DNA of 64,000 nt, taken from IMG/VR virus record IMGVR_UViG_3300036766_002289, positions 1-64,000 of that record; one strand, written 5' to 3'. The translations under genes and the position numbers were made by a program. Position 1 is the stretch's first letter; the number at the start of each line of letters is the position of its first letter. Of the stretch, positions 9,593-33,940 are shown in pieces. The notes beneath the pieces were generated by a model. That model was not told the DNA's origin, made no database searches, and saw only the letters and a list, made by a program, of their open reading frames with translations.

Positions 9593-10261
9593 ATGCGCAG
9601 AGAGAAGGCTAAGTCTATTGCATTGCCCTCGAAGTCTAGAAAAGCGTTTCATATGGAGTTTAAGAATACCGCCCAGAAAATAGCATGGACGAATTTTGAA
9701 CAAAATGATGTTTTATTCCTATTAGGCCCCGCTGGTGTAGGTAAAACCTTCTTGGCTATGGCATTCGCAATTAGTGAGATTCTTAGTAAGAAAAAGAAGA
9801 AGATAATTCTTACAAGACCTATCGTAGATGCAGGTGAGCATTTAGGCTATTTGCCAGGAACTTTCCAAGAGAAAATCAATCCTTATTTAGCTCCACTGTA
9901 TGACTCAATGGATGCTTTAGTAGGTGTTGACACACAAGAAAGAGACAGAGTGAATGGAGCAATAGAGATTGCACCAATGGCCTACCTCAGAGGCAGAACA
10001 TTTGTTAATTCGGTGTGTATCTTAGACGAAGCCCAAAATTGTACTAAGGCTCAGATTATACTGTTCCTTACAAGATTAGGAGAAGATTCAAAAATCATTG
10101 TTACGGGTGATCCTACGCAGTCAGATTTACATGGGACTCCGTATATTAATGAGGCAGTTAAACTATTGGAATCAGTGCCTGGAATAGGCATGATGCAGTT
10201 TACTGAAGAACAGATTGTAAGACACCCGTTGGTAGGTAGGATTTTAGAAAAGTTAAAGTAA
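9593..10261 (+). CDS. phoH: PhoH family ATPase
   Basis: GPAGVGKT, LGYLPG, AYLRGRTF, ILDEAQN, GDPTQSD. Confidence 0.95.
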   Translation: MRREKAKSIALPSKSRKAFHMEFKNTAQKIAWTNFEQNDVLFLLGPAGVGKTFLAMAFAISEILSKKKKKIILTRPIVDAGEHLGYLPGTFQEKINPYLAPLYDSMDALVGVDTQERDRVNGAIEIAPMAYLRGRTFVNSVCILDEAQNCTKAQIILFLTRLGEDSKIIVTGDPTQSDLHGTPYINEAVKLLESVPGIGMMQFTEEQIVRHPLVGRILEKLK

Positions 10262-20265: not shown

Positions 20266-20910
20266 ATTATGTCCTTTAGTGCCATTACTTTGTAGTCATT
20301 TAGATAAAGATGCATCATACACTTCATGAAGGTGGCGTGGGTTGTGGTAGTCTCATGTGGATTTTCTGATAGTTCTTTAACAACGTCATGCACACAAAAG
20401 ATTCCATATTCATTGTTTTGTACTTTTTCTAAGTCTGCTATAAAATCTCCAAAAGTGTAAGTGTTGCTGAATATACCAGTGCATTTAATGTCTAATGGGT
20501 CATGAATTTTTGGTTTAAAGGGGTCTCCAGCACCCGACCTAGCATATTGAAAACCTGCTTGTTTTATTATTTCTTTTGCTTCATCATTGATGAAATAGGC
20601 TGGATATGCGAAGGAAGTTGGTTTTTTTAAGCCAACTGTATGGAATACTTGATTCAAATGTTCAATTTCTCGTTTATTGATTTCTTCGCTTGTTTCTGTC
20701 ATATGGACATGGCTAAAAAAGGTGATTACCCAATTCAAATCCGTTTCTTTCAAACTCTCTTAGATGTTCTCGTTTGAATATTTTGCAGGTGCCTAAGTAG
20801 TAACCAGATACGAAAAATGTGGCTTTGAAGTCTAGTTCTTCTAGCAATGGCTTGACAAGCAATAGGTGGGAATCGTAGCAGTCATCAAATGTTAGGACTA
20901 TGTTCTTCAT
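20262..20910 (-). pseudogene. polysaccharide deacetylase (NodB) split by a +1 frameshift
   Basis: LTFDD, ATFFV, ELGNH in ORF 20713-20910; FSH, FAYP, YARS, VH in the other frame; junction at A6 run 20715-20720. Confidence 0.75.
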
Positions 20911-21079
20911 GTATTATTGTAGTTTATGAAATTTCAAAATGTACAGGGTATGGAAAGTAGTAATAAAATATTTTCTGAATATTTGAAATTTTCTTGACAA
21001 AAATAAAAAGGATACTATTATATACCTAGTCGTTAAGCGGAGAATCTTCACGACAAGTAAGAAAAGTTTTAGAATGAGA

Positions 21080-21108
21080 TTGACAAACCTTGAATACGAT
21101 AGTAAGAT
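21080..21108 (+). promoter_or_regulatory. sigma70-like promoter for the first Y-like RNA
   Basis: TTGACA-N17-TAAGAT; a second, TTGACA-N16-TAAGAT, lies at 21336-21363. Confidence 0.65.
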
Positions 21109-21123
21109 AGGTGAGTCAGATAT

Positions 21124-21241
21124 GAGTGGGTAGCTAAAAGATTGCTTTGGCAACTTAGACAAGTAATTGTCTCCAACCCTGAAGCTTACAAGCACTAGTA
21201 TTTGAAACTAAAGAATGTTGGTTCAAGTCCAACCCCACTCG
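21124..21241 (+). ncRNA. tRNA-like RNA (UUG loop) with a permuted Y-RNA-like module in the D-loop
   Basis: acceptor GAGTGGG/CCCACTC; T arm GTTGG-TTCAAGT-CCAAC; insert CTTAGAC-aagtaatt-GTCTCCAA...CTTACAAGC. Confidence 0.75.
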
Positions 21242-21248
21242 CTTAGTA

Positions 21249-21316
21249 GCGTCCCCTAAAGGAAGAACTTACAAACAACAGGAATATGTTAAAAATAGTT
21301 CTTTAAACTTGGACGC
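21249..21316 (+). ncRNA. stand-alone Y-RNA-like RNA
   Basis: GCGTCC-CCTAA...CTTGGACGC end stem; AAGAACT/AGTTCTT helix; CTTACAAAC; T-run downstream. Confidence 0.75.
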
Positions 21317-21377
21317 AACTTTTTTTGAAAAGAACTTGACAAGGATAGGAAAAGTAGTAAGATAAGGAAGTAACGCT

Positions 21378-21501
21378 GGGGGATAAAGAAAGCTTTCGCA
21401 ACTTGGACAAGAAATTGTCCCCAACGGTTTGAGCTTACAAACTTTTAGGTAAAGAAAAGACTTTTAATCTTTTTAAATCGGTTCGACTCCGATATCCTCC
21501 A
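21378..21501 (+). ncRNA. tRNA-Lys(UUU)-like RNA with a permuted Y-like module between acceptor stem and D arm
   Basis: GGGGGAT/ATCCTCC-A; AC arm AAAGA-CTTTTAA-TCTTT; T arm ATCGG-TTCGACT-CCGAT; insert CTTGGAC..GTCCCCAA..CTTACAAAC. Confidence 0.75.
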
Positions 21502-21595
21502 CTAAGGCTTTCACTGAGCCTAGATTTTGTGTGACGGTCGCCTAGACCCAGAGCAAAACGATCAGTGATAAACGGGGTTTAAAAAGGCTGGATTA

Positions 21596-21702
21596 TGGTT
21601 GACGATAGCGGCAGATTTTACTATTTGCTGCTAAAACTTAGACAGGAAACTGTCTCCAAAAGTAGTAGCTTACAAACCGAATATAACTTTAAGATTTAAC
21701 CA
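21596..21702 (+). ncRNA. permuted Y-RNA-like RNA without a tRNA body
   Basis: TGGTTGA/TTAACCA closing stem; CTTAGAC-aggaaact-GTCTCCAA; GCTGCTA/TAGTAGC; CTTACAAAC. Confidence 0.65.
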
Positions 21703-21735
21703 AGAGACTAAATAAAATGAACAGTAGTTAAAAAT

Positions 21736-21806
21736 GGGGCTATAGTGAAGCGGGATCACGTTAGAATGGCATTCTGAAATCTGGGGTTCAAATCCCCATA
21801 GCTCCA
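21736..21806 (+). tRNA. tRNA-Ala(GGC)
   Basis: cloverleaf; G3:U70; anticodon GGC. Confidence 0.85.
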
Positions 21807-21872
21807 CTCGGGACTGTACGTTCTTTCCGCAGTTGGATATGTCGCTTGAACGGAACCAACCAGTCCTGAATT

Positions 21873-21944
21873 GTCTGGGTAGCCAAGCGGTAAGGCATCA
21901 GTCTGCAAAGCTGAATAGCGTAGGTTCAAATCCTACCCCAGACT
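21873..21944 (+). tRNA. tRNA-Cys(GCA)
   Basis: cloverleaf; TCAGT-CTGCAAA-GCTGA; U73. Confidence 0.9.
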
Positions 21945-22529
21945 TATTATTTCTGTTATGTGTTTTTTAATTTGTAGGAATGCTTCTTTAACGTAATGTT
22001 CTTTAGATACTAAGTCAGGGACAACAATTAGGTTTATATGGTTTTGATTTGCTAAGGCTAGTTTTTCTTTGTCTCTTTCTTGTATTCTGTTCAACTTGTT
22101 TTGGCCGTAAATTGGTTTGAAATGTACGATGCCGTTCCATTCTATTGCTAATTTTATAGATGGAATAGCAATGTCTACTTCATAACCAGGCAATAGAGTT
22201 TTATCATTAGGTATTATCTCCAATGATTGAAATTCTTCCTTTAAAAGGTCAAACAATATTTTTTCGCATCTTGAACGACGGGATTTACGTTTTTTAGTAT
22301 TATTGAAGGTTGTGGCGCAAGATTTACTACAAAAGGTGTTGGCTTTGATTTCGCTTGGGCGTCTGTAGAATTTTTCACCGCAAAGATGACAAGATACTTC
22401 TAGTTTTGTTTGGGTGTATGACGAAGAACATTTTCTTGAACAAAAAGGATTATTTCTTTTTTTGTAGTTTGATGTTCTTGAGAATTCTCTTTTGCAAAAG
22501 GTGCAGATAAGTTTGTGTGTTAATAGCAT
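21933..22529 (-). CDS. zinc-finger + PD-(D/E)xK (Vsr/DUF559-like) putative homing endonuclease
   Basis: CxxC / FCSxxC repeats, EVDI...LAIEWNG.VH; likely start at 22529 after ACTATAT. Confidence 0.75.
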   Translation of the reverse strand: MLLTHKLICTFCKREFSRTSNYKKRNNPFCSRKCSSSYTQTKLEVSCHLCGEKFYRRPSEIKANTFCSKSCATTFNNTKKRKSRRSRCEKILFDLLKEEFQSLEIIPNDKTLLPGYEVDIAIPSIKLAIEWNGIVHFKPIYGQNKLNRIQERDKEKLALANQNHINLIVVPDLVSKEHYVKEAFLQIKKHITEIISLG

Positions 22530-22582
22530 ATATATTATATAGTAGGATTGGAACGTTTCTGAACCTACTGCTGACTTTTGAC

Positions 22583-22610
22583 TTGACAATGCGGAAAGTT
22601 GTGGTATAGT
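22583..22610 (+). promoter_or_regulatory. sigma70-like promoter of the Ubl gene and second RNA cluster
   Basis: TTGACA-N16-TATAGT, then an AGGAGG SD. Confidence 0.65.
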
Positions 22611-22629
22611 AAAAAGGAGGGAAGGAAAA

Positions 22630-22863
22630 ATGGACAATCAAGTATTAGACGCGGTTCCTCAGATTCACATTCGCTACGACGGACGTAGCATTGATATTCC
22701 TTTGAGCGAAGTGGACATTGGTGTTTTGTCTACCGACGATCAGATTCGCAACGCAGTTGCGGAAAACATGGGCGTTCCAGTAGCTAAGCTCCGCGCTTTT
22801 GCTATTGATAAGAACGTAGAAACGAATCACATCACGCTTCGACCAGAAGCTGTGTTTGGTTGA
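22630..22863 (+). CDS. small ubiquitin-like (beta-grasp-like) protein ending in Gly
   Basis: 77 aa; beta-beta-alpha-beta-like pattern; C-terminus LRPEAVFG; strong SD; ThiF and JAB genes nearby. Confidence 0.6.
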   Translation: MDNQVLDAVPQIHIRYDGRSIDIPLSEVDIGVLSTDDQIRNAVAENMGVPVAKLRAFAIDKNVETNHITLRPEAVFG

Positions 22864-22879
22864 GATTTTTTAATCCCCA

Positions 22880-22944
22880 GGCATGGGGCTGACTTGGTGG
22901 GGAGTTCCGAAAGGAATTACCAAGTGATAGTTTGAAACCATGCC
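22880..22944 (+). ncRNA. unclassified structured RNA
   Basis: GGCATGG/CCATGCC, CTTGGT/ACCAAG, GTTCC-GAAA-GGAAT nested stems. Confidence 0.45.
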
Positions 22945-22948
22945 AATT

Positions 22949-23078
22949 GCAGGAGTAGCTGAAAAGTTAATAGTTTTTTGTACTTGGACGGTTTAAACCC
23001 GTCCCCGACTTAAAAAACTTACAAACAAGCGTCAGTAACCTAAACTGAAGAATGTAGGTGCGAATCCTACCTCCTGCT
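22949..23078 (+). ncRNA. tRNA-like RNA (CCU loop) with a permuted Y-like module in the D-loop
   Basis: GCAGGAG/CTCCTGC; TCAGT-AACCTAA-ACTGA; GTAGG-TGCGAAT-CCTAC; insert CTTGGAC..GTCCCCGA..CTTACAAAC. Confidence 0.75.
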
Positions 23079-23084
23079 CTTTAT

Positions 23085-23155
23085 TCCGTCTCCTAAATGG
23101 AAAACTTACAAACAATGCAATGAATAGTTTAAATAGTTTTCTGAACTTAGACGGA
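23085..23155 (+). ncRNA. stand-alone Y-RNA-like RNA
   Basis: TCCGTCT-CCTAA...CTTAGACGGA; GAAAACT/AGTTTTC; CTTACAAAC. Confidence 0.75.
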
Positions 23156-23178
23156 TTATTTTTATTTTAAGTGACTTG

Positions 23179-23305
23179 TTTTGTCTCCAATGATGGGAAC
23201 TTACAAACAATTTGCTCAATGGTAGAGCATCAACTTTAGACGTTGAAGAGTGTTGGTTCAATTCCAACATTGTTTTCCAAAACAGTTTTCATGACTTAGA
23301 CAAAA
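23179..23305 (+). ncRNA. YrlA-like Y RNA: Ro-binding stem enclosing a tRNA-like domain
   Basis: TTTTGTCTCCAA...CTTAGACAAAA outer stem; inner AAACAAT/ATTGTTT acceptor, GCTC/GAGC D arm, TCAAC-TTTAGAC-GTTGA, GTTGG-TTCAATT-CCAAC, then TCCA. Confidence 0.8.
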
Positions 23306-23310
23306 TGAGA

Positions 23311-23403
23311 TGGCTGCTAGCTTAACGGTATGAAGCGCTTGTGAATTCGGGCTTTAAATCCTGATGAAACTTGAGAAGTAGGGTTCAACTCCTTACGTGG
23401 CCA
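23311..23403 (+). ncRNA. tRNA-like RNA with expanded anticodon arm
   Basis: TGGCTGC/GTGGCCA, GCTT/AAGC D arm, TTCAACT T loop; about 38-nt anticodon region with internal TCGGG/CCTGA hairpin. Confidence 0.6.
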
Positions 23404-23404
23404 C

Positions 23405-23481
23405 TTTCTGTCCCCCAAAGGTAAAGCTTACAAACATTACCCAAATTCAGTGTTAAACAGCTTTATAAACTTGGACAGAAA
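23405..23481 (+). ncRNA. stand-alone Y-RNA-like RNA
   Basis: TTTCTGTCC-CCCAA...CTTGGACAGAAA; TAAAGCT/AGCTTTA; CTTACAAAC; T-run. Confidence 0.75.
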
Positions 23482-23778
23482 TTTTTTTACTTCAAGATAT
23501 AAGGACAGCGCGGTAAGAAGACAGGTGATTGTGGTCTTCCTTCTGACTAGCGGGAAAAAGCGCATTTACCGAGCAAAAGTTCTCTTTCATCGGAATGACT
23601 CGGCATTAGCCAACTTTATGATAGGGCAAGCTAGTTAATATCTTGGGGTGTAAAAATGTCTGAAGCAGAGATTTTAGTGCAAAAGATTAAAGCCGCCATA
23701 CAGGCCCATAAAGACAAAGAATCAAATAAAATCAATAATTTAGTAAAGCAAATTAATAAAGTCATCCATAAATAATGC

Positions 23779-24501: not shown

Positions 24502-26043
<1,542 letters not shown>

Positions 26044-26124: not shown

Positions 26125-26484
26125 ATGAATATGAAAGCCGATGAAAAATTTTTCTACATGGGGGTCCAACATGGTATAAGTGACCAATGTAATAAGTATT
26201 CCAATATGGTTACTAACATCATGGCTATCAAGAACCATCCATGTACCCGAGTATATCCAGCTAAGTATTTGGAAGGGTATACCAAAGGTTATGAAGATAC
26301 TAAGGGTAAATCTTGGTACATAGTTACCGTTGCCAATACTAAGATTAAGTCTTACTACGCTGATGGGCAATGGTTAGATACTAAAGATAATGCTACTAAG
26401 TTCCCTACTAGGGCCGCGTTAGAATTGGTAATGAAGAAAATTCCAAGCCAGCGTGGTGGTAAGTGTGGCATGACATTAGAATAG
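26125..26484 (+). CDS. hypothetical protein, paralog of 13230..13580
   Basis: shared motifs YLEGYTKGYE, KSWY, ATKFPTR. Confidence 0.65.
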   Translation: MNMKADEKFFYMGVQHGISDQCNKYSNMVTNIMAIKNHPCTRVYPAKYLEGYTKGYEDTKGKSWYIVTVANTKIKSYYADGQWLDTKDNATKFPTRAALELVMKKIPSQRGGKCGMTLE

Positions 26485-26510
26485 GAGATACACCAAATGT
26501 CACTATAAAT

Positions 26511-26999
26511 TTGGATGAAGCCAAACTAAAAATGGACAAAACAATTCAATTATTAGAAGAACAATTGAAGGGCATCAGAAGGTCATCTATTAGTGCTGGT
26601 TTCATTGAAACTGTTAAAGTCCCTTATTATGGGCAAATGACGCCTATACGTTTTATAGGTATTGTCGGTAAATGTCAAAATGGTATAACCATAACTCCAC
26701 ATGACTCAAGTTTGGTAAATGGTATTGCTAAGTTTCTTCAGGATGAAAACTTACTTAATGCTTATGCATTCTCAAAAACAACGGTTGTTATTAGTATTCC
26801 ACCTGCAAACACAGGTGAAATTGAGAGAGTTAAAAATCATATTAAGAAGTTGGGCGAAGACTCCAAGATTTCAATAAGGAATTTGAGGAAAAGTATAAGG
26901 AAATCCTTATCTAAGGAAGAATTGAAGGAAGCAGAAAAAGATTTACAAATCCTAACAGATGAGGCTTGTAACAAAATAGAGGAAATGACTCATGACTAA
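26511..26999 (+). CDS. frr: ribosome recycling factor
   Basis: L..IR..S.S...IETVKVPYYG, ITPHD, IPP, K.GE..KISIRN.R, EKDLQILTD; start uncertain. Confidence 0.85.
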   Translation: MDEAKLKMDKTIQLLEEQLKGIRRSSISAGFIETVKVPYYGQMTPIRFIGIVGKCQNGITITPHDSSLVNGIAKFLQDENLLNAYAFSKTTVVISIPPANTGEIERVKNHIKKLGEDSKISIRNLRKSIRKSLSKEELKEAEKDLQILTDEACNKIEEMTHD

Positions 27000-28279: not shown

Positions 28280-28603
28280 CACAGTGACAGAAAATAAAGC
28301 GTTTTTGATGCGAAAGCAAATTAGACTTTTAGTGTTGAAATATTTATTAACCCTAAACTATAAGGGTAAAGGACTGGTCGTAATAGACGGTGAAAAATTA
28401 ATGGATGAGTGTAAGATTACACCACACCAAATGCGGAGAAGTTTGGGTGATTTGTGCAAAGGATTGTCATTGTATATACAGATTCATCCTGATTCATTTG
28501 TTGCGAAATGGAAGATTTCAGAACCTAGTTTGAAACAAGTTGCAGCGGCTTTAGACATTGCAATGACCGATGGTAATTGTACTAGTTGGAATCCAGAGGA
28601 AGT

Positions 28604-29533
28604 ATGAACCTATTCGATAAACTTGCGGCAGAAGAAACAGCTTTCTTCAATTCTCAATTATTTTCCCCTGTTCTCAAGGGAAAGCCAATTAGAGTACGTA
28701 TTGCTGGAATCATCGTAACCCTTAGTGTTACTAAGCCTAAGAATTTCGAAGGTTGGGGTGTTTTTGCACCTATATCCGCTAAAACCGCTCGTTTCGTTCG
28801 TGAACCAAATATGACCGAAAAGCAAAGTTATTTTAACTTATTCCCAGCATTAAGACTTATTTTGTGTCGTCATAGTAATGACCAATGGTTCGGTATCCCC
28901 GCCAATCAGTCTGATACTAGATTCAAAATTACTGGAACCGTACCAATCCAACTTTGTACTGAAGTACAAATGTTTGATATGGTTAAGGTTCGTTTTGATG
29001 GGACTAATATCTGGTTTGAACAAATTGATCCCCGACATAGCCTAAAGCATTCTGCATATATGCGTGAATCGGTTATTAAATTCCTAGAAGCTCCAAAGCT
29101 TGAACTTTCAGGTTTAACTATCGAAGAACGCGATGCATATTTAATTGCATTGAATGACGCTTTGGCTGCGGACGCAGAAGCAAAGCGTGACAAGCAAGAA
29201 GAACGTATCCAAAAGGCGTTGGCATTAACTGGTGCCACATATCAAAGCTATATTGAACGTGGTGACACATTTACCATTGAATTTATGGTCGGACGTGAAC
29301 GCCATCGTTCAGTAGTCAAAAAGGAAAATCTTGCCGTTGAATCTGCTGGTATTTGTCTTGCTGGTACAGATCGTAACTTTGATCTTCAAAGCTTGGTTGG
29401 GGTTATTAGAGAAGGTCAACGTAATCGTAGAATTGTTCGCGTTGGGGAAAATCGTCAATTTGGTAATCCTAATGACTATGGTTATGAACAAGAAGACTAT
29501 GATCGTCAACTTGGAGATGATGACTATGACTAA
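28604..29533 (+). CDS. conserved-looking hypothetical protein; candidate E2-like conjugating enzyme
   Basis: C-terminal domain with AGICL (compare the E2 active-site GxICL) followed by FDLQSLVGVIRE helix; near JAB, ThiF and Ubl genes. Confidence 0.45.
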   Translation: MNLFDKLAAEETAFFNSQLFSPVLKGKPIRVRIAGIIVTLSVTKPKNFEGWGVFAPISAKTARFVREPNMTEKQSYFNLFPALRLILCRHSNDQWFGIPANQSDTRFKITGTVPIQLCTEVQMFDMVKVRFDGTNIWFEQIDPRHSLKHSAYMRESVIKFLEAPKLELSGLTIEERDAYLIALNDALAADAEAKRDKQEERIQKALALTGATYQSYIERGDTFTIEFMVGRERHRSVVKKENLAVESAGICLAGTDRNFDLQSLVGVIREGQRNRRIVRVGENRQFGNPNDYGYEQEDYDRQLGDDDYD

Positions 29534-30300: not shown

Positions 30301-30753
30301 ATGAAAAGAGAGCATTGTTGGGTATTGTTGGGTAGTGTTAGGGAGAATTTATGGTTTGGGCGGCGAGCTAAAATGACTCGTGGTGCCCCTTGTAGTGTTG
30401 ATTTTAATGCAGATTATGTTATCAATCGTGAAGAGACTAAGGGCGATGTAATCGGCTGGTTACATACGCACCCAGGTATGATTGCCAGTCCAAGTAACCG
30501 TGACCATCGCACAATGAAGGCATGGGTTCTTGCATTAGGCCACCCCTTGGTTTGTGCGATTGCTGGCGTAGATGGATTGCGTGCTTATTGGTATATGGAT
30601 GATGAGTCTGAACCGATTGAATCTGCGGTATGCGTTAAGCTAGCTAATTTCATTGTTGGTGTTACTAATCCTGTTTGTTGTGATAATTTTGACCAGTTGA
30701 TAAATAAGTGTGTATCTTGGGACGAAGCAGAAGAAAAATTAGGACTTAAGTAA
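30301..30753 (+). CDS. JAB/MPN+ (Mov34) metalloprotease
   Basis: VIGWLHTHP....PSNRD JAMM motif HxH-x7-S-x2-D. Confidence 0.85.
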   Translation: MKREHCWVLLGSVRENLWFGRRAKMTRGAPCSVDFNADYVINREETKGDVIGWLHTHPGMIASPSNRDHRTMKAWVLALGHPLVCAIAGVDGLRAYWYMDDESEPIESAVCVKLANFIVGVTNPVCCDNFDQLINKCVSWDEAEEKLGLK

Positions 30754-33292: not shown

Positions 33293-33940
33293 ATGGCAAA
33301 TAGCAAATTTCATCATGAAGAAATCTATCGTGGTAAGGATTTAGCCGCAAGACTAGGTGTTCCAATCACCGTCTGTGGTGCAGGTGCCATCGGTAGCAAT
33401 CTAGTAGATAATCTTACCCGTCAAGGATTTAGCAAAATTACCGTTATTGACATGGATCGTGTTGAAGTTCATAATCTTAATACTCAGATTTATGCTGAAG
33501 CCGATGTTGGTGCGCTCAAGGCAGACGCACTTAAAAACCGCGTGTTTAGAAACATTGGCGTGGAAATTGAAGCAGTCAACAAGGAAATGTCAGCTGCCAA
33601 TGTAAAGCAGCTTCTCAAGAAGGCTAGTATCCTTGTTGACTGCTTCGATAATAACAAAGCACGGCAATTAGTACAGAATCATGCAAGAGAGAAGGGTAAT
33701 CCTTGCCTACATATTGGTCTTTATGAAGATTATGCCGAGGTTATGTGGGATAAGAAATATCGTGTTCCCAAGGACCAAACACAAGGCGATGTATGTGATT
33801 ATCCGCTTGCTCGTAATATTGCCATGTTAGCGGTCATTGTAGCAACTGAAGAACTCTTAAGCTTTCAGTTGGAGGAGCCACCAAGGTTCCAAGATTGGTC
33901 AATTACTCTAAAAGATTTAGCAATTAAAAAATTCTCTTGA
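33293..33940 (+). CDS. ThiF/MoeB/E1-like adenylyltransferase
   Basis: VCGAGAIGS, IDMDRVEVHNLNTQ, DVGALKA, VDCFDN; DVCDYP candidate catalytic Cys; own TTGACA..TATAGT promoter at 33245-33272. Confidence 0.9.
   Translation: MANSKFHHEEIYRGKDLAARLGVPITVCGAGAIGSNLVDNLTRQGFSKITVIDMDRVEVHNLNTQIYAEADVGALKADALKNRVFRNIGVEIEAVNKEMSAANVKQLLKKASILVDCFDNNKARQLVQNHAREKGNPCLHIGLYEDYAEVMWDKKYRVPKDQTQGDVCDYPLARNIAMLAVIVATEELLSFQLEEPPRFQDWSITLKDLAIKKFS

What the first reader, a model, noticed from the sequence alone, without database searches (positions are those of the whole stretch)
21124..23078. Circularly permuted Y module grafted inside tRNA bodies (tRNA-Y chimeras)
In three RNAs the helix strands are in reversed order, forming a hairpin CTTRGAC-loop-GTCYCC. 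This module is inserted inside an otherwise complete cloverleaf: in the D-loop at 21124-21241 (UUG loop) and 22949-23078 (CCU loop), and between acceptor stem and D arm at 21378-21501 (Lys UUU). This is the inverse of the YrlA topology, in which the Ro stem encloses the tRNA domain; that topology is also present here (23179-23305). Inference: the chimeras keep free acceptor ends, so they could be RNase P/CCA-processed and perhaps aminoacylated, tethering Ro60 to ribosomes, synthetases or anticodon nucleases. I know of no description of this topology.
Basis: partly seen in the sequence, partly recalled or inferred. Interest (0 to 1): 0.92.

Follow-up and report, generated by a model that had tools for sequence, protein, structure and literature searches.

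The report
tRNA-shaped RNAs carrying a Y-RNA hairpin
Next to a Ro60-like gene, a huge phage encodes tRNA-shaped RNAs with free acceptor ends that carry a Y-RNA-like hairpin in their D region; this conserved RNA class, apparently undescribed, is also found beside the same gene set in Planctomycetota genomes.

Summary
At 21124-21241, 21378-21501 and 22949-23078 there are three cloverleaf-like RNAs. Each has a 7-bp acceptor stem, an anticodon arm and a T arm, and each is interrupted in the D region by a hairpin (CTTRGAC-loop-GTCYCC plus a second stem and TACAAAC).

A covariance model finds 50 such RNAs in 21 loci. Of base-pair cells, 98.6% are paired and 19 of 23 pairs show compensatory changes. 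All 50 lie 0.2-4.3 kb upstream of a 500-aa ORF, on its strand. That ORF's predicted fold is Ro60 (TROVE ring plus vWA).

The same module also occurs in normal order, with its ends at the helix, both alone and enclosing a tRNA-like body. A copy also sits in the 5'UTR of the Ro60-like gene.

Best reading: this is a new architecture of Ro60 partner (Y-like) RNA, whose tRNA-like frame supplies tRNA-type end maturation and a tRNA-mimic effector domain. Binding by the Ro60-like protein is inferred, not shown.

Aminoacylation or ribosome tethering is unsupported: some members lack an anticodon arm and the window's third RNA lacks U33.

New context: the RNAs belong to a conserved cassette (ubiquitin-like 77-aa protein, Ro60-like, 309-aa protein, JAB, E1-like) that is also chromosomal in Planctomycetota.

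No Rfam family or held paper describes the RNAs or the cassette.

The parts
21080..21108 (+). sigma-70-like promoter (TTGACA-17-TAAGAT) about 15 nt upstream of chimera W1
   Evidence: 10 of 12 matches; consensus match only
21124..21241 (+). Chimera W1: tRNA-like frame (acceptor GAGUGGG/CCCACUC, loop AUUUGAA, T arm) with a permuted Y-like hairpin in the D loop
   Evidence: R1 model 104.8 bits; Rfam tRNA 30.0 bits partial; MFE fold gives the cloverleaf plus hairpin, z -2.6
21249..21326 (+). Normal-order simple Y-like module (GTCCCC..CTTACAAAC..CTTGGAC) ending in a T run
   Evidence: fold z -4.6
21336..21363 (+). sigma-70-like promoter upstream of chimera W2
21378..21501 (+). Chimera W2: Y-like hairpin between the acceptor 5' strand and a complete D arm; anticodon loop CUUUUAA (UUU)
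   Evidence: R1 100.3 bits; Rfam tRNA 28.9 bits partial; fold z -3.2; ortholog in L003 shows a compensated T stem
21505..21521 (+). terminator-like hairpin directly after W2
21610..21702 (+). Permuted Y-like hairpin plus TACAAAC without a tRNA frame; orthologs in L003 and L018
   Evidence: R1 49.3 bits; fold
22630..22863 (+). p77: conserved 77-aa protein ending ...RPEAVFG, embedded in the RNA array; candidate ubiquitin-like protein
   Evidence: found in 68 of about 95 Ro60 loci, and in the long loci tabulated it lies upstream of the Ro60-like gene; alignment; no family hit
22949..23078 (+). Chimera W3: Y-like hairpin (62-nt insert) in the D loop; anticodon loop AACCUAA (CCU, A33)
   Evidence: Rfam tRNA 43.1 bits full length; R1 108.1 bits; fold z -5.3
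23086..23158 (+). Normal-order simple Y-like module
23181..23305 (+). Normal-order Y-like stem enclosing a complete tRNA-like cloverleaf (anticodon UAG) through its acceptor ends
   Evidence: Rfam tRNA 67.6 bits at 23205-23276; the same arrangement recurs in L002, L003, L004, L010, L013
23408..23479 (+). Normal-order simple Y-like module
24502..24522 (+). Y-helix-like hairpin (GNRA-capped) between a promoter-like site and the Shine-Dalgarno sequence of the Ro60-like gene; candidate autoregulatory operator
   Evidence: kept with compensatory changes in L003, L019, L020, L024
24541..26043 (+). Ro60-like protein (TROVE-type ring plus vWA with DxSxS)
   Evidence: PDB 9KOP/9L5Y E 5.5e-5; AF2 pLDDT 82; the top 13 Foldseek hits are all Ro60, TM 0.56-0.66; MIDAS residues invariant
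28586..29533 (+). p315 (309 aa from the likely start): conserved partner downstream of the Ro60-like gene; beta-barrel rich, weakly OB/S1-like
30301..30753 (+). Prok-JAB peptidase of the conserved cassette
33293..33940 (+). ThiF/E1-like adenylating enzyme of the conserved cassette

Best explanation
These are Y-like partner RNAs of the phage's Ro60-like protein, built on a tRNA frame.

The element that recurs in every RNA of the cluster is a two-helix module. It has a 6-bp helix flanked by unpaired ACUU and CC-NAC, an internal loop, a second helix, and a single-stranded UACAAAC.

In the ordinary form the RNA ends lie at the first helix, as in classical Y RNAs. In the chimeras that helix is closed by a short loop, usually GNRA. 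The module opens at its other end into the D region of a tRNA-like body.

The 5' and 3' ends of the RNA are therefore those of a 7-bp acceptor stem stacked on a T arm.

Inferred steps:
- The acceptor/T minihelix lets host RNase P and the tRNA 3'-end enzymes cut each unit out of the array transcripts, and probably lets a CCA be added.
- The Ro60-like ring binds the hairpin.
- The tRNA-shaped body acts as the effector domain, like the tRNA-like domain of YrlA. It would bring Ro60 and the rest of the cassette to proteins that recognise tRNA shape, or act as a decoy for them.
- The extra copy of the hairpin beside the Shine-Dalgarno sequence of the Ro60-like gene would give feedback control.

Shown here: the RNAs, their conserved structure, their linkage to the Ro60-fold gene and the cassette, and the permutation.

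Inferred: Ro60 binding, processing, and the effector role.
For: - Structure: 50 members in 21 loci. 98.6% of cells are paired, 19 of 23 pairs have compensatory changes, 0 of 500 shuffles reach these values, and slid controls give 44-54%.
- The anticodon stem was not in the model, yet it is 91.5% paired and all 5 pairs are compensated.
- Linkage: all 50 are on the strand of the Ro60-like gene, 211-4342 nt upstream, median 1.1 kb. Within the 64-kb window the model hits strongly only in this cluster.
- A pattern scan of viral contigs found the module with its partner strand almost only on contigs already known to carry the Ro60-like gene. L111 is the unchecked exception.
- The protein is Ro60-fold.
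- Same module in normal order: about 36 regex matches in 18 loci, 29 with 5 of 5 stem-2 pairs.
- The 5' strand GUCYCC resembles the vertebrate GGUCCGA that Ro60 contacts (PMC4201824).
- An operator-like copy in the 5'UTR is kept with compensatory changes in four relatives.
- tRNA-type ends: G1 in 48 of 50, and the discriminator is followed by CT in 42 of 50, the same as the phage's own tRNAs at 24 of 33. Promoter-like and terminator-like sites bracket W1 and W2.
- Precedents: YrlA tRNA mimicry and RNase P/CCA processing of M. smegmatis YrlA (PMC4201824, bioRxiv 10.1101/312249). Thermus phage Ro60 binds phage Y-like RNAs and host PNPase (PMC12135203).
Against: - No binding or expression data exist.
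- The helix lacks the bacterial GNCGAAN0-1G motif, and Rfam's Y_RNA model gives nothing even at E up to 10.
- The cassette holds another possible RNA binder (p315, weakly OB-like) that could own the hairpin or the UACAAAC.
- Most loci were fetched through the Ro60-like gene, so linkage to it is partly by construction.
- 28 of 50 members keep a canonical anticodon loop. A pure processing and scaffold role does not explain that.
Confidence: 0.6

Rival explanations
1. The chimeras are working tRNAs. They would be aminoacylated and used, or at least bound, by EF-Tu and ribosomes, and would carry Ro60 as cargo. This would tether Ro60 and its nuclease partners to translation, or mark phage tRNAs.
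For: - 41 of 50 have 7-nt loops, and 28 of 50 have U33 and a purine at 37, far above chance. Anticodons recur (CAU, GAA, GUU, UCU/CCU, UUU).
- W2 and its ortholog keep anticodon UUU and discriminator A.
- The acceptor ends look like those of the phage's tRNAs.
Against: - Three members have no anticodon arm and several more have only a stub. W3 has A33. W1's loop is not kept in L018 or L003 (CAGUAAA). U8 is present in 24 of 50, and the D arm is disrupted.
- The window already has ordinary tRNA-Gln(UUG) and tRNA-Lys(UUU).
- A 40-60-nt arm plus a 55-kDa ring at the elbow is hard to fit into ribosomal sites (inference).
Confidence: 0.12
2. The hairpin and/or the UACAAAC is the handle of another cassette protein (p315 or p77) rather than of Ro60. 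Alternatively, the tRNA-like RNAs are substrates or cofactors of the ubiquitin-like/E1 pair, for example in a thiolation-type or tagging reaction, with Ro60 acting only as a scaffold.
For: - p77, p315, JAB and ThiF are kept in the same order beside the Ro60-like gene in every long phage locus but one (L013) and in most Planctomycetota chromosomal loci checked.
- p77 ends in a nearly invariant Gly, with short tails in some homologs.
- The p315 model is beta-barrel rich, with weak hits to S1/OB proteins.
- From memory: Ubl/E1 pairs serve tRNA thiolation in other organisms.
Against: - The p315 fold matches are weak (TM below 0.2) and no family is assigned.
- The p77 fold could not be tested.
- The helix resembles the vertebrate Ro60 site, and a copy sits on the Ro60-like mRNA itself.
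Confidence: 0.15
3. The hairpin is an intron-like or mobile insertion in tRNA genes. It would either be removed to give ordinary tRNAs, or have inactivated them.
For: - The insert sits in a tRNA-like frame.
- In six members, including W1 and W3, deleting the module in silico lets ARAGORN call a tRNA whose anticodon matches the loop read.
Against: - In about 41 of 50 members neither deletion variant gives any ARAGORN tRNA call.
- The module has conserved sequence and covarying helices identical to free-standing modules.
- It is in a constant orientation and always beside the Ro60-like gene.
- It has no group I core and no bulge-helix-bulge motif (sequence).
- The frames are not recent copies of the phage's isoacceptor tRNAs.
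Confidence: 0.04

Closest known systems
YrlA (bacterial tRNA-like Y RNA; S. Typhimurium, M. smegmatis, mycobacteriophages)
   Same: Encoded within a few kb upstream of a Ro60 ortholog on the same strand. Combines a Ro60-type helix with a tRNA-like domain that has a T arm. M. smegmatis YrlA is cut by RNase P and receives CCA, so a free acceptor end on a Y RNA has a precedent (PMC4201824).
   Different: In YrlA the Ro helix is formed by the RNA's 5' and 3' ends, the acceptor stem is a closed stem-loop, there is no anticodon loop, and the helix replaces the anticodon arm (bioRxiv 10.1101/312249). Here the acceptor ends are free in a one-piece RNA, the Y helix is loop-closed, it sits in the D region, and an anticodon arm is usually kept. 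The motif is GUCYCC/CUURGAC plus UACAAAC, not GNCGAAN0-1G.
Metazoan Y RNAs (Rfam RF00019)
   Same: A helix with unpaired residues next to it. The 5' strand GUCYCC is close to GGUCCGA (PMC4201824) and the 3' strand CUURGAC is close to the vertebrate CUUGAC (the latter from memory). The normal-order modules in the cluster have their ends at this helix.
   Different: No match to the Rfam model even at E up to 10. Transcribed from bacterial-type promoters in arrays. The chimeras have a different topology.
Thermus phage phiLo Ro60 with Yrl1/Yrl2
   Same: A phage-encoded Ro60 with Y-like RNAs encoded upstream of it. It is the closest solved relative of the window's protein by sequence (PMC12135203).
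   Different: Yrl1 and Yrl2 are stem-bulge-stem RNAs defined by a CGAA motif. No tRNA frame, arrays or Ubl/E1 cassette were reported.
tmRNA and viral tRNA-like structures
   Same: tRNA mimics with a free acceptor end and a T arm, processed by tRNA enzymes, with a large non-tRNA domain attached.
   Different: Those are aminoacylated and have known roles in translation or replication. Their extra domain leaves from the anticodon side. No relation to Ro60.
Circularly permuted tRNA genes (Cyanidioschyzon, some archaea)
   Same: Show that tRNA-like RNAs tolerate circular permutation and are matured by RNase P/Z (cited in bioRxiv 10.1101/312249).
   Different: Those are precursors of ordinary tRNAs. 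Here it is the Y module, not the tRNA, that is permuted.

Membership tests
Bacterial Y RNA / YrlA | Encoded within about 4 kb of a Ro60 ortholog, on the same strand | tested here: met
   50 of 50 on the same strand, 211-4342 nt upstream (49 of 50 within 4 kb). The ORF is Ro60-fold.
Bacterial Y RNA / YrlA | GNCGAAN0-1G (or GGUCCGA) motif in the Ro60-binding strand | tested here: not met
   The conserved strand is GUCYCC-NAC, with no CGAA. Only partial likeness to GGUCCGA.
Bacterial Y RNA / YrlA | Topology: Ro helix made by the 5' and 3' ends, closed acceptor stem-loop, no anticodon loop | tested here: not met
   The acceptor stem is formed by the RNA ends, the Y helix is loop-closed, and an anticodon arm is present in most.
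Bacterial Y RNA / YrlA | tRNA-like domain with a T arm (GGUUCRANYCC) and D-loop features | tested here: met
   T stem G-C pairs invariant; T loop UUCRANY in 35 of 50; a GG after UACAAAC in many members.
Bacterial Y RNA / YrlA | Physically bound by Ro60 | not testable with these tools
   Indirect only: a 5'UTR copy of the helix on the Ro60-like mRNA.
Metazoan Y RNA (Rfam RF00019) | Match to the Rfam covariance model | tested here: not met
   No hit at E up to 10 in 20900-23700.
tRNA | Cloverleaf with a 7-bp acceptor stem, anticodon arm and T arm, scoring above Rfam's gathering threshold | tested here: inconclusive
   W3 43.1 bits full length with a 62-nt insert; W1 30.0 bits partial; W2 28.9 bits (threshold 29). 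The stems covary. ARAGORN calls none.
tRNA | Canonical core: U8, compact D arm, U33 and purine 37 | tested here: not met
   U8 in 24 of 50; D region holds the 40-60-nt module; canonical loop in 28 of 50; W3 has A33.
tRNA | Aminoacylation and decoding | not testable with these tools
   None.
Ro60 / TROVE-vWA protein (ORF 24541-26043) | HEAT-repeat ring plus C-terminal vWA domain with a MIDAS motif | tested here: met
   The top 13 Foldseek hits are Ro60 structures over the full length, TM 0.56-0.66. phmmer to 9KOP/9L5Y gives E 5.5e-5. D323/S325/S327 are invariant. Pfam TROVE itself is not detected and vWA is below cut-off.
Intron-containing tRNA gene (group I or bulge-helix-bulge) | Insert with an intron core, or splice motifs, whose removal restores a tRNA | tested here: not met
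   The insert is a 40-62-nt conserved hairpin module. In-silico removal gives no ARAGORN tRNA call in about 41 of 50, and an anticodon-consistent call in only 6.

The most novel reading that the evidence does not exclude
The chimeras are CCA-tailed, possibly chargeable tRNA mimics that serve as interchangeable guide adaptors. Each would present a different tRNA identity (Lys-UUU, Gln-UUG, Arg-YCU, Met-CAU, Asn-GUU, Phe-GAA). This would aim a Ro60 ring, and the ubiquitin-like/E1/JAB machinery encoded with it, at proteins that recognise particular tRNAs, such as anticodon nucleases, synthetases or ribosomes. That would be an RNA-addressed protein-tagging or decoy system, shared by Planctomycetota and their huge phages.
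Probability: 0.1. Interest if true: 0.92.

Novelty: new variant of a known kind. Interest (0 to 1): 0.8.

Why it matters
Y RNAs are the obligate partners of Ro60. In bacteria only two architectures (Yrn1 and YrlA) are characterised, and what the tRNA-like domain of YrlA does is an open question.

This family offers:
- at least 50 natural variants in which the same Ro60-type module is wired into a tRNA frame in a different way;
- side by side in one operon, the unpermuted forms;
- a likely operator on the Ro60-like mRNA.

That gives a direct handle on which parts of a Y RNA matter for Ro60 binding, and on what the tRNA mimic recruits.

The unexpected linkage of a Ro60-like gene to a ubiquitin-like protein, an E1-like enzyme and a JAB peptidase is conserved from huge phages to multi-megabase Planctomycetota contigs. 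It suggests a function for bacterial Ro60 beyond the PNPase complex.

Practically, tRNA finders miss these RNAs, so tRNA-like content in huge phages and Planctomycetota is under-counted.

Tried and rejected
- Rfam at gathering and at E up to 10: only the tRNA model matches. No Y_RNA, YrlA-type or other family.
- BLAST of the region against 50,697 phage records: one distant hit to an unannotated 595-kb phage, uninformative.
- In-silico deletion of the module followed by ARAGORN, as a test of 'tRNA plus insert': about 41 of 50 members give no tRNA call in either variant, and only 6 give a call with the matching anticodon. The frames are therefore not simply interrupted tRNAs.
- Comparison of the frames with the phage's own isoacceptor tRNAs: only generic similarity, so they are not recent copies.
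- Two regex classifiers for normal versus permuted modules were too loose or buggy and were discarded. A stricter one was used, but it still misses some window modules and includes at least one artefact (L002 6033-6164), so its counts are approximate.
- A strict regex for 5'UTR hairpins found almost nothing. Reading the upstream sequences directly showed the hairpin in five close relatives.
- Pfam, PHROGs, NCBIfam and PDB sequence searches for p77 and p315: no assignment. Foldseek for p315 gave only weak OB/S1-like matches.
- A K-turn reading of the internal loop was considered by eye and dropped, because no G-A tandem sits in the right place.
- The first genome-contig scan failed; the repeat worked.
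Full report
**What is in the sequence.** The window is part of a huge-phage contig of about 590 kb with 37 ARAGORN tRNA calls. Between 21100 and 23480, all on the + strand, eight RNAs share three motifs: GTCYCC, CTTACAARC and CTTRGAC.
- CTTACAARC occurs 9 times in 64 kb, against 1.4 expected, and 8 of these are in the cluster.
- The Y of GTCYCC and the R of CTTRGAC covary in 8 of 8 modules.
- Four modules are in 'normal' order, GTCYCC...CTTACAAAC...CTTRGAC: about 21249-21326, 23086-23158, 23181-23305 and 23408-23479.
- Four are permuted, CTTRGAC-loop-GTCYCC...CTTACAARC, with hairpins at 21154, 21402, 21637 and 22983.
- A ninth hairpin lies at 24502-24522.

**The three chimeras.**
- Rfam's tRNA model aligns 22949-23078 from position 1 to 71 at 43.1 bits, with a 62-nt insertion in the D loop. 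It aligns the 3' parts of the other two at 30.0 and 28.9 bits.
- Single-sequence folds give a 7-bp acceptor stem, the two-helix hairpin, an anticodon arm and a T arm, with z-scores of -2.6, -3.2 and -5.3.
- In W1 and W3 the module lies within the D loop. In W2 it lies between the acceptor strand and a complete D arm.
- W3's anticodon loop has A where tRNAs have U33.

**It is a conserved family.** The 500-aa ORF at 24541-26043 brought in 17 viral and 80 metagenomic loci.
- A parse of hairpins flanked by a T arm and a complementary 7-mer gave 17 non-redundant chimeras, each with a different acceptor stem.
- A covariance model built from them finds 50 full-length matches at 56-114 bits in 21 loci.
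- On their alignment 98.6% of pair cells are standard pairs, and 19 of 23 pairs change on both sides. No shuffle of 500 reaches these values, and sliding the partners by 1-3 columns drops pairing to 44-54%.
- The alignment was fitted to the model, which favours the modelled stems. The anticodon stem was not in the model, yet it is 91.5% paired with all five pairs compensated.
- A D stem around the module is weaker: 75% paired where it can be aligned.
- The hairpin helix is 6 bp in 36 of 50 and is capped by GNRA in 28 of 50.
- The unpaired ACUU before the helix, CC-NAC after it, and UACAAAC are the most conserved letters of the RNA.

**Permutation.** About 36 normal-order modules in 18 loci carry the same GTCYCC-NAC-(stem 2)-TACAAAC and (stem 2)-ACTTRGAC. 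In 29 of them stem 2 pairs 5 of 5.
- 22 enclose a T arm and 14 are simple stem-loops (a regex count, approximate).
- The enclosed tRNA-like bodies start inside the TACAAAC motif (A1) in the window and in L002, L003, L004, L010 and L013.
- So one module is used in three wirings: alone, around a tRNA-like body, and inside one.
- The form at 23181-23305 is not YrlA-like. YrlA joins its tRNA-like domain through the anticodon stem and has a closed acceptor loop (PMC4201824; bioRxiv 10.1101/312249).

**tRNA-like ends.**
- G1 is present in 48 of 50.
- The base after the acceptor stem is A, G or U.
- The two bases after the discriminator are CT in 42 of 50.
- The phage's ordinary tRNAs show the same CT in 24 of 33 and encode no CCA.
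- Promoter-like sites lie 15 nt upstream of W1 and W2, and a terminator-like hairpin follows W2.
- These features fit excision by tRNA-end enzymes, but this is inference.

**Are they tRNAs?** 41 of 50 have 7-nt anticodon loops and 28 have U33 and a purine at 37. Anticodons recur: CAU, GAA, GUU, UCU/CCU, UUU. Several points count against a decoding role:
- Three members have no anticodon arm and several more have only a stub.
- W1's loop differs in its closest relatives.
- U8 is present in only 24 of 50.
- Members without a GG after TACAAAC tend to have altered T loops.
- Removing the module in silico gives no ARAGORN tRNA call in about 41 of 50.
- The frames are not copies of the phage's isoacceptor tRNAs.
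- The window already holds normal tRNA-Gln(UUG) and tRNA-Lys(UUU).

**The protein partner.**
- Pfam sees only a sub-threshold vWA domain.
- phmmer finds the Thermus phage phiLo Ro60 (9KOP, 9L5Y; E 5.5e-5).
- The AlphaFold model (pLDDT 82) has Ro60 structures as its top 13 Foldseek hits over the full length: human, Xenopus, Deinococcus Rsr and phiLo.
- The MIDAS residues are invariant.
- All 50 chimeras lie 211-4342 nt upstream of this gene on its strand, which matches the operational criterion used for YrlA (PMC4201824).
- GUCYCC resembles the vertebrate GGUCCGA that Ro60 contacts (PMC4201824). It is not the bacterial GNCGAA motif, and Rfam's Y_RNA model does not match.
- The hairpin at 24502-24522 sits between a promoter-like site and the Shine-Dalgarno sequence of the Ro60-like gene. 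It is kept with compensatory helix changes in L003, L019, L020 and L024. An operator that mimics the main RNA target is the usual logic of autoregulation. I take this as the best indirect support that this helix is what the protein binds.

**A larger system.** tblastn with the window's ORFs shows a cassette: p77 - Ro60-like - p315 - JAB - ThiF/E1-like.
- It is kept in this order on one strand in every long phage locus but one (L013).
- It is also kept in most Planctomycetota loci checked, including contigs of 1.6-6.3 Mb. Some lack a detectable JAB. Isolate genomes (Zavarzinella formosa, Gemmata) carry the Ro60-like gene, but no other cassette gene was detected in their loci.
- p77 ends in a nearly invariant Gly (...RPEAVFG), and some homologs have short tails after it. 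Together with the E1-like enzyme and the JAB peptidase, this suggests a ubiquitin-like protein. Its fold was not tested.
- The p315 model is beta-barrel rich, with only weak S1/OB-like matches.
- The RNA model also hits upstream of the Ro60-like gene in the genome loci, best at 89.8 bits.
- More distant members use an ACUUGUAC/GUACCC helix with 30-80-nt loops.
- In L144 the D arm is intact and the Y arm takes the place of the anticodon arm. That is the true un-permuted counterpart of YrlA, but the evidence is one single-sequence fold with a non-significant z-score.

**Verdict.** The RNAs are real, structured and conserved. Their topology is not in Rfam 15 or in the papers I could search. The library is incomplete and two Wolin-lab reviews were not held.
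- Best explanation: a new architecture of Ro60-associated Y-like RNA on a tRNA frame (0.6).
- Rivals: working tRNAs with a Ro60 handle (0.12); RNAs that belong to another cassette protein or to the Ubl/E1 chemistry (0.15); intron-like inserts (0.04).

Noticed in passing
window 24502-24522 (and L003, L019, L020, L024 just upstream of their Ro60-like genes): A GNRA-capped copy of the Y-like helix sits between a promoter-like site and the Shine-Dalgarno sequence of the Ro60-like gene. It is kept with compensatory changes in four relatives. It is a candidate translational operator for autoregulation.
   Followed up: partly
window 22630-22863, 24541-26043, 28586-29533, 30301-30753, 33293-33940: A conserved cassette of p77 (C-terminal Gly, ubiquitin-like?), Ro60-like, p315, JAB and ThiF/E1-like, in the same order in huge phages and in most Planctomycetota chromosomal loci checked. 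I found no description of it in the papers searched.
   Followed up: partly
L121-L200 (e.g. L124, L173, L157): This Ro60-like clade is mainly found in Planctomycetota (Gemmataceae, Isosphaeraceae, Pirellulaceae, Phycisphaerae), including multi-megabase contigs and isolates, with a few in Chloroflexota and Desulfobacterota. This hints at the phage's host range or at the source of the cassette.
   Followed up: partly
L144:4032-4190, L039:4731-4880, L173:4070-4801: Divergent relatives use an ACUUGUAC/GUACCC helix with 30-80-nt terminal loops. In L144 the D arm is intact and the Y arm replaces the anticodon arm, a second free-acceptor topology.
   Followed up: partly
window 21933-22637 (- strand): An HNH homing-endonuclease ORF (PHROG 559, E 1e-19) is inserted in the middle of the RNA array. 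It is present only in this phage and its identical IMG/VR copy.
   Followed up: partly
window 21574-21702: GGGGTTTAAAAAGGCTGG at 21574 matches the 5' end of a chimera in L003 (3089-3199). It is followed instead by the frame-less permuted module. This looks like a deletion or recombination remnant.
   Followed up: no
window 22880-22944: A long, stable hairpin (-28.5 kcal/mol, z -2.8) lies directly 5' of chimera W3. It matches no family.
   Followed up: no
window 23312-23404: ARAGORN calls a 93-nt 'tRNA-???' with a 2-base anticodon. It has an acceptor stem and a T arm but an aberrant middle, and lies between two Y-like modules.
   Followed up: no
window tRNAs (33 Rfam hits) and all 50 chimeras: The discriminator base is followed by CT in 24 of 33 phage tRNAs and in 42 of 50 chimeras, and no CCA is encoded. 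This may be a shared 3'-processing signal.
   Followed up: partly
L060:3664-3802, L002:5982-6119, L004 6523-6593, L016 4420-4495: Several chimeras and tRNA-like genes near Ro60 loci carry the unusual anticodon AUU (A34).
   Followed up: no
window 26463-26999 and 9593-10261: The phage encodes a ribosome recycling factor (Pfam RRF, E 5e-23) just downstream of the Ro60-like gene, and a PhoH-like ATPase further upstream.
   Followed up: no
L111:3762-3860: A Y-like 5' strand plus TACAAAC, followed by a tRNA-like T arm, on a 58-kb viral contig not fetched through the Ro60-like gene. Whether that contig carries the cassette was not checked.
   Followed up: no
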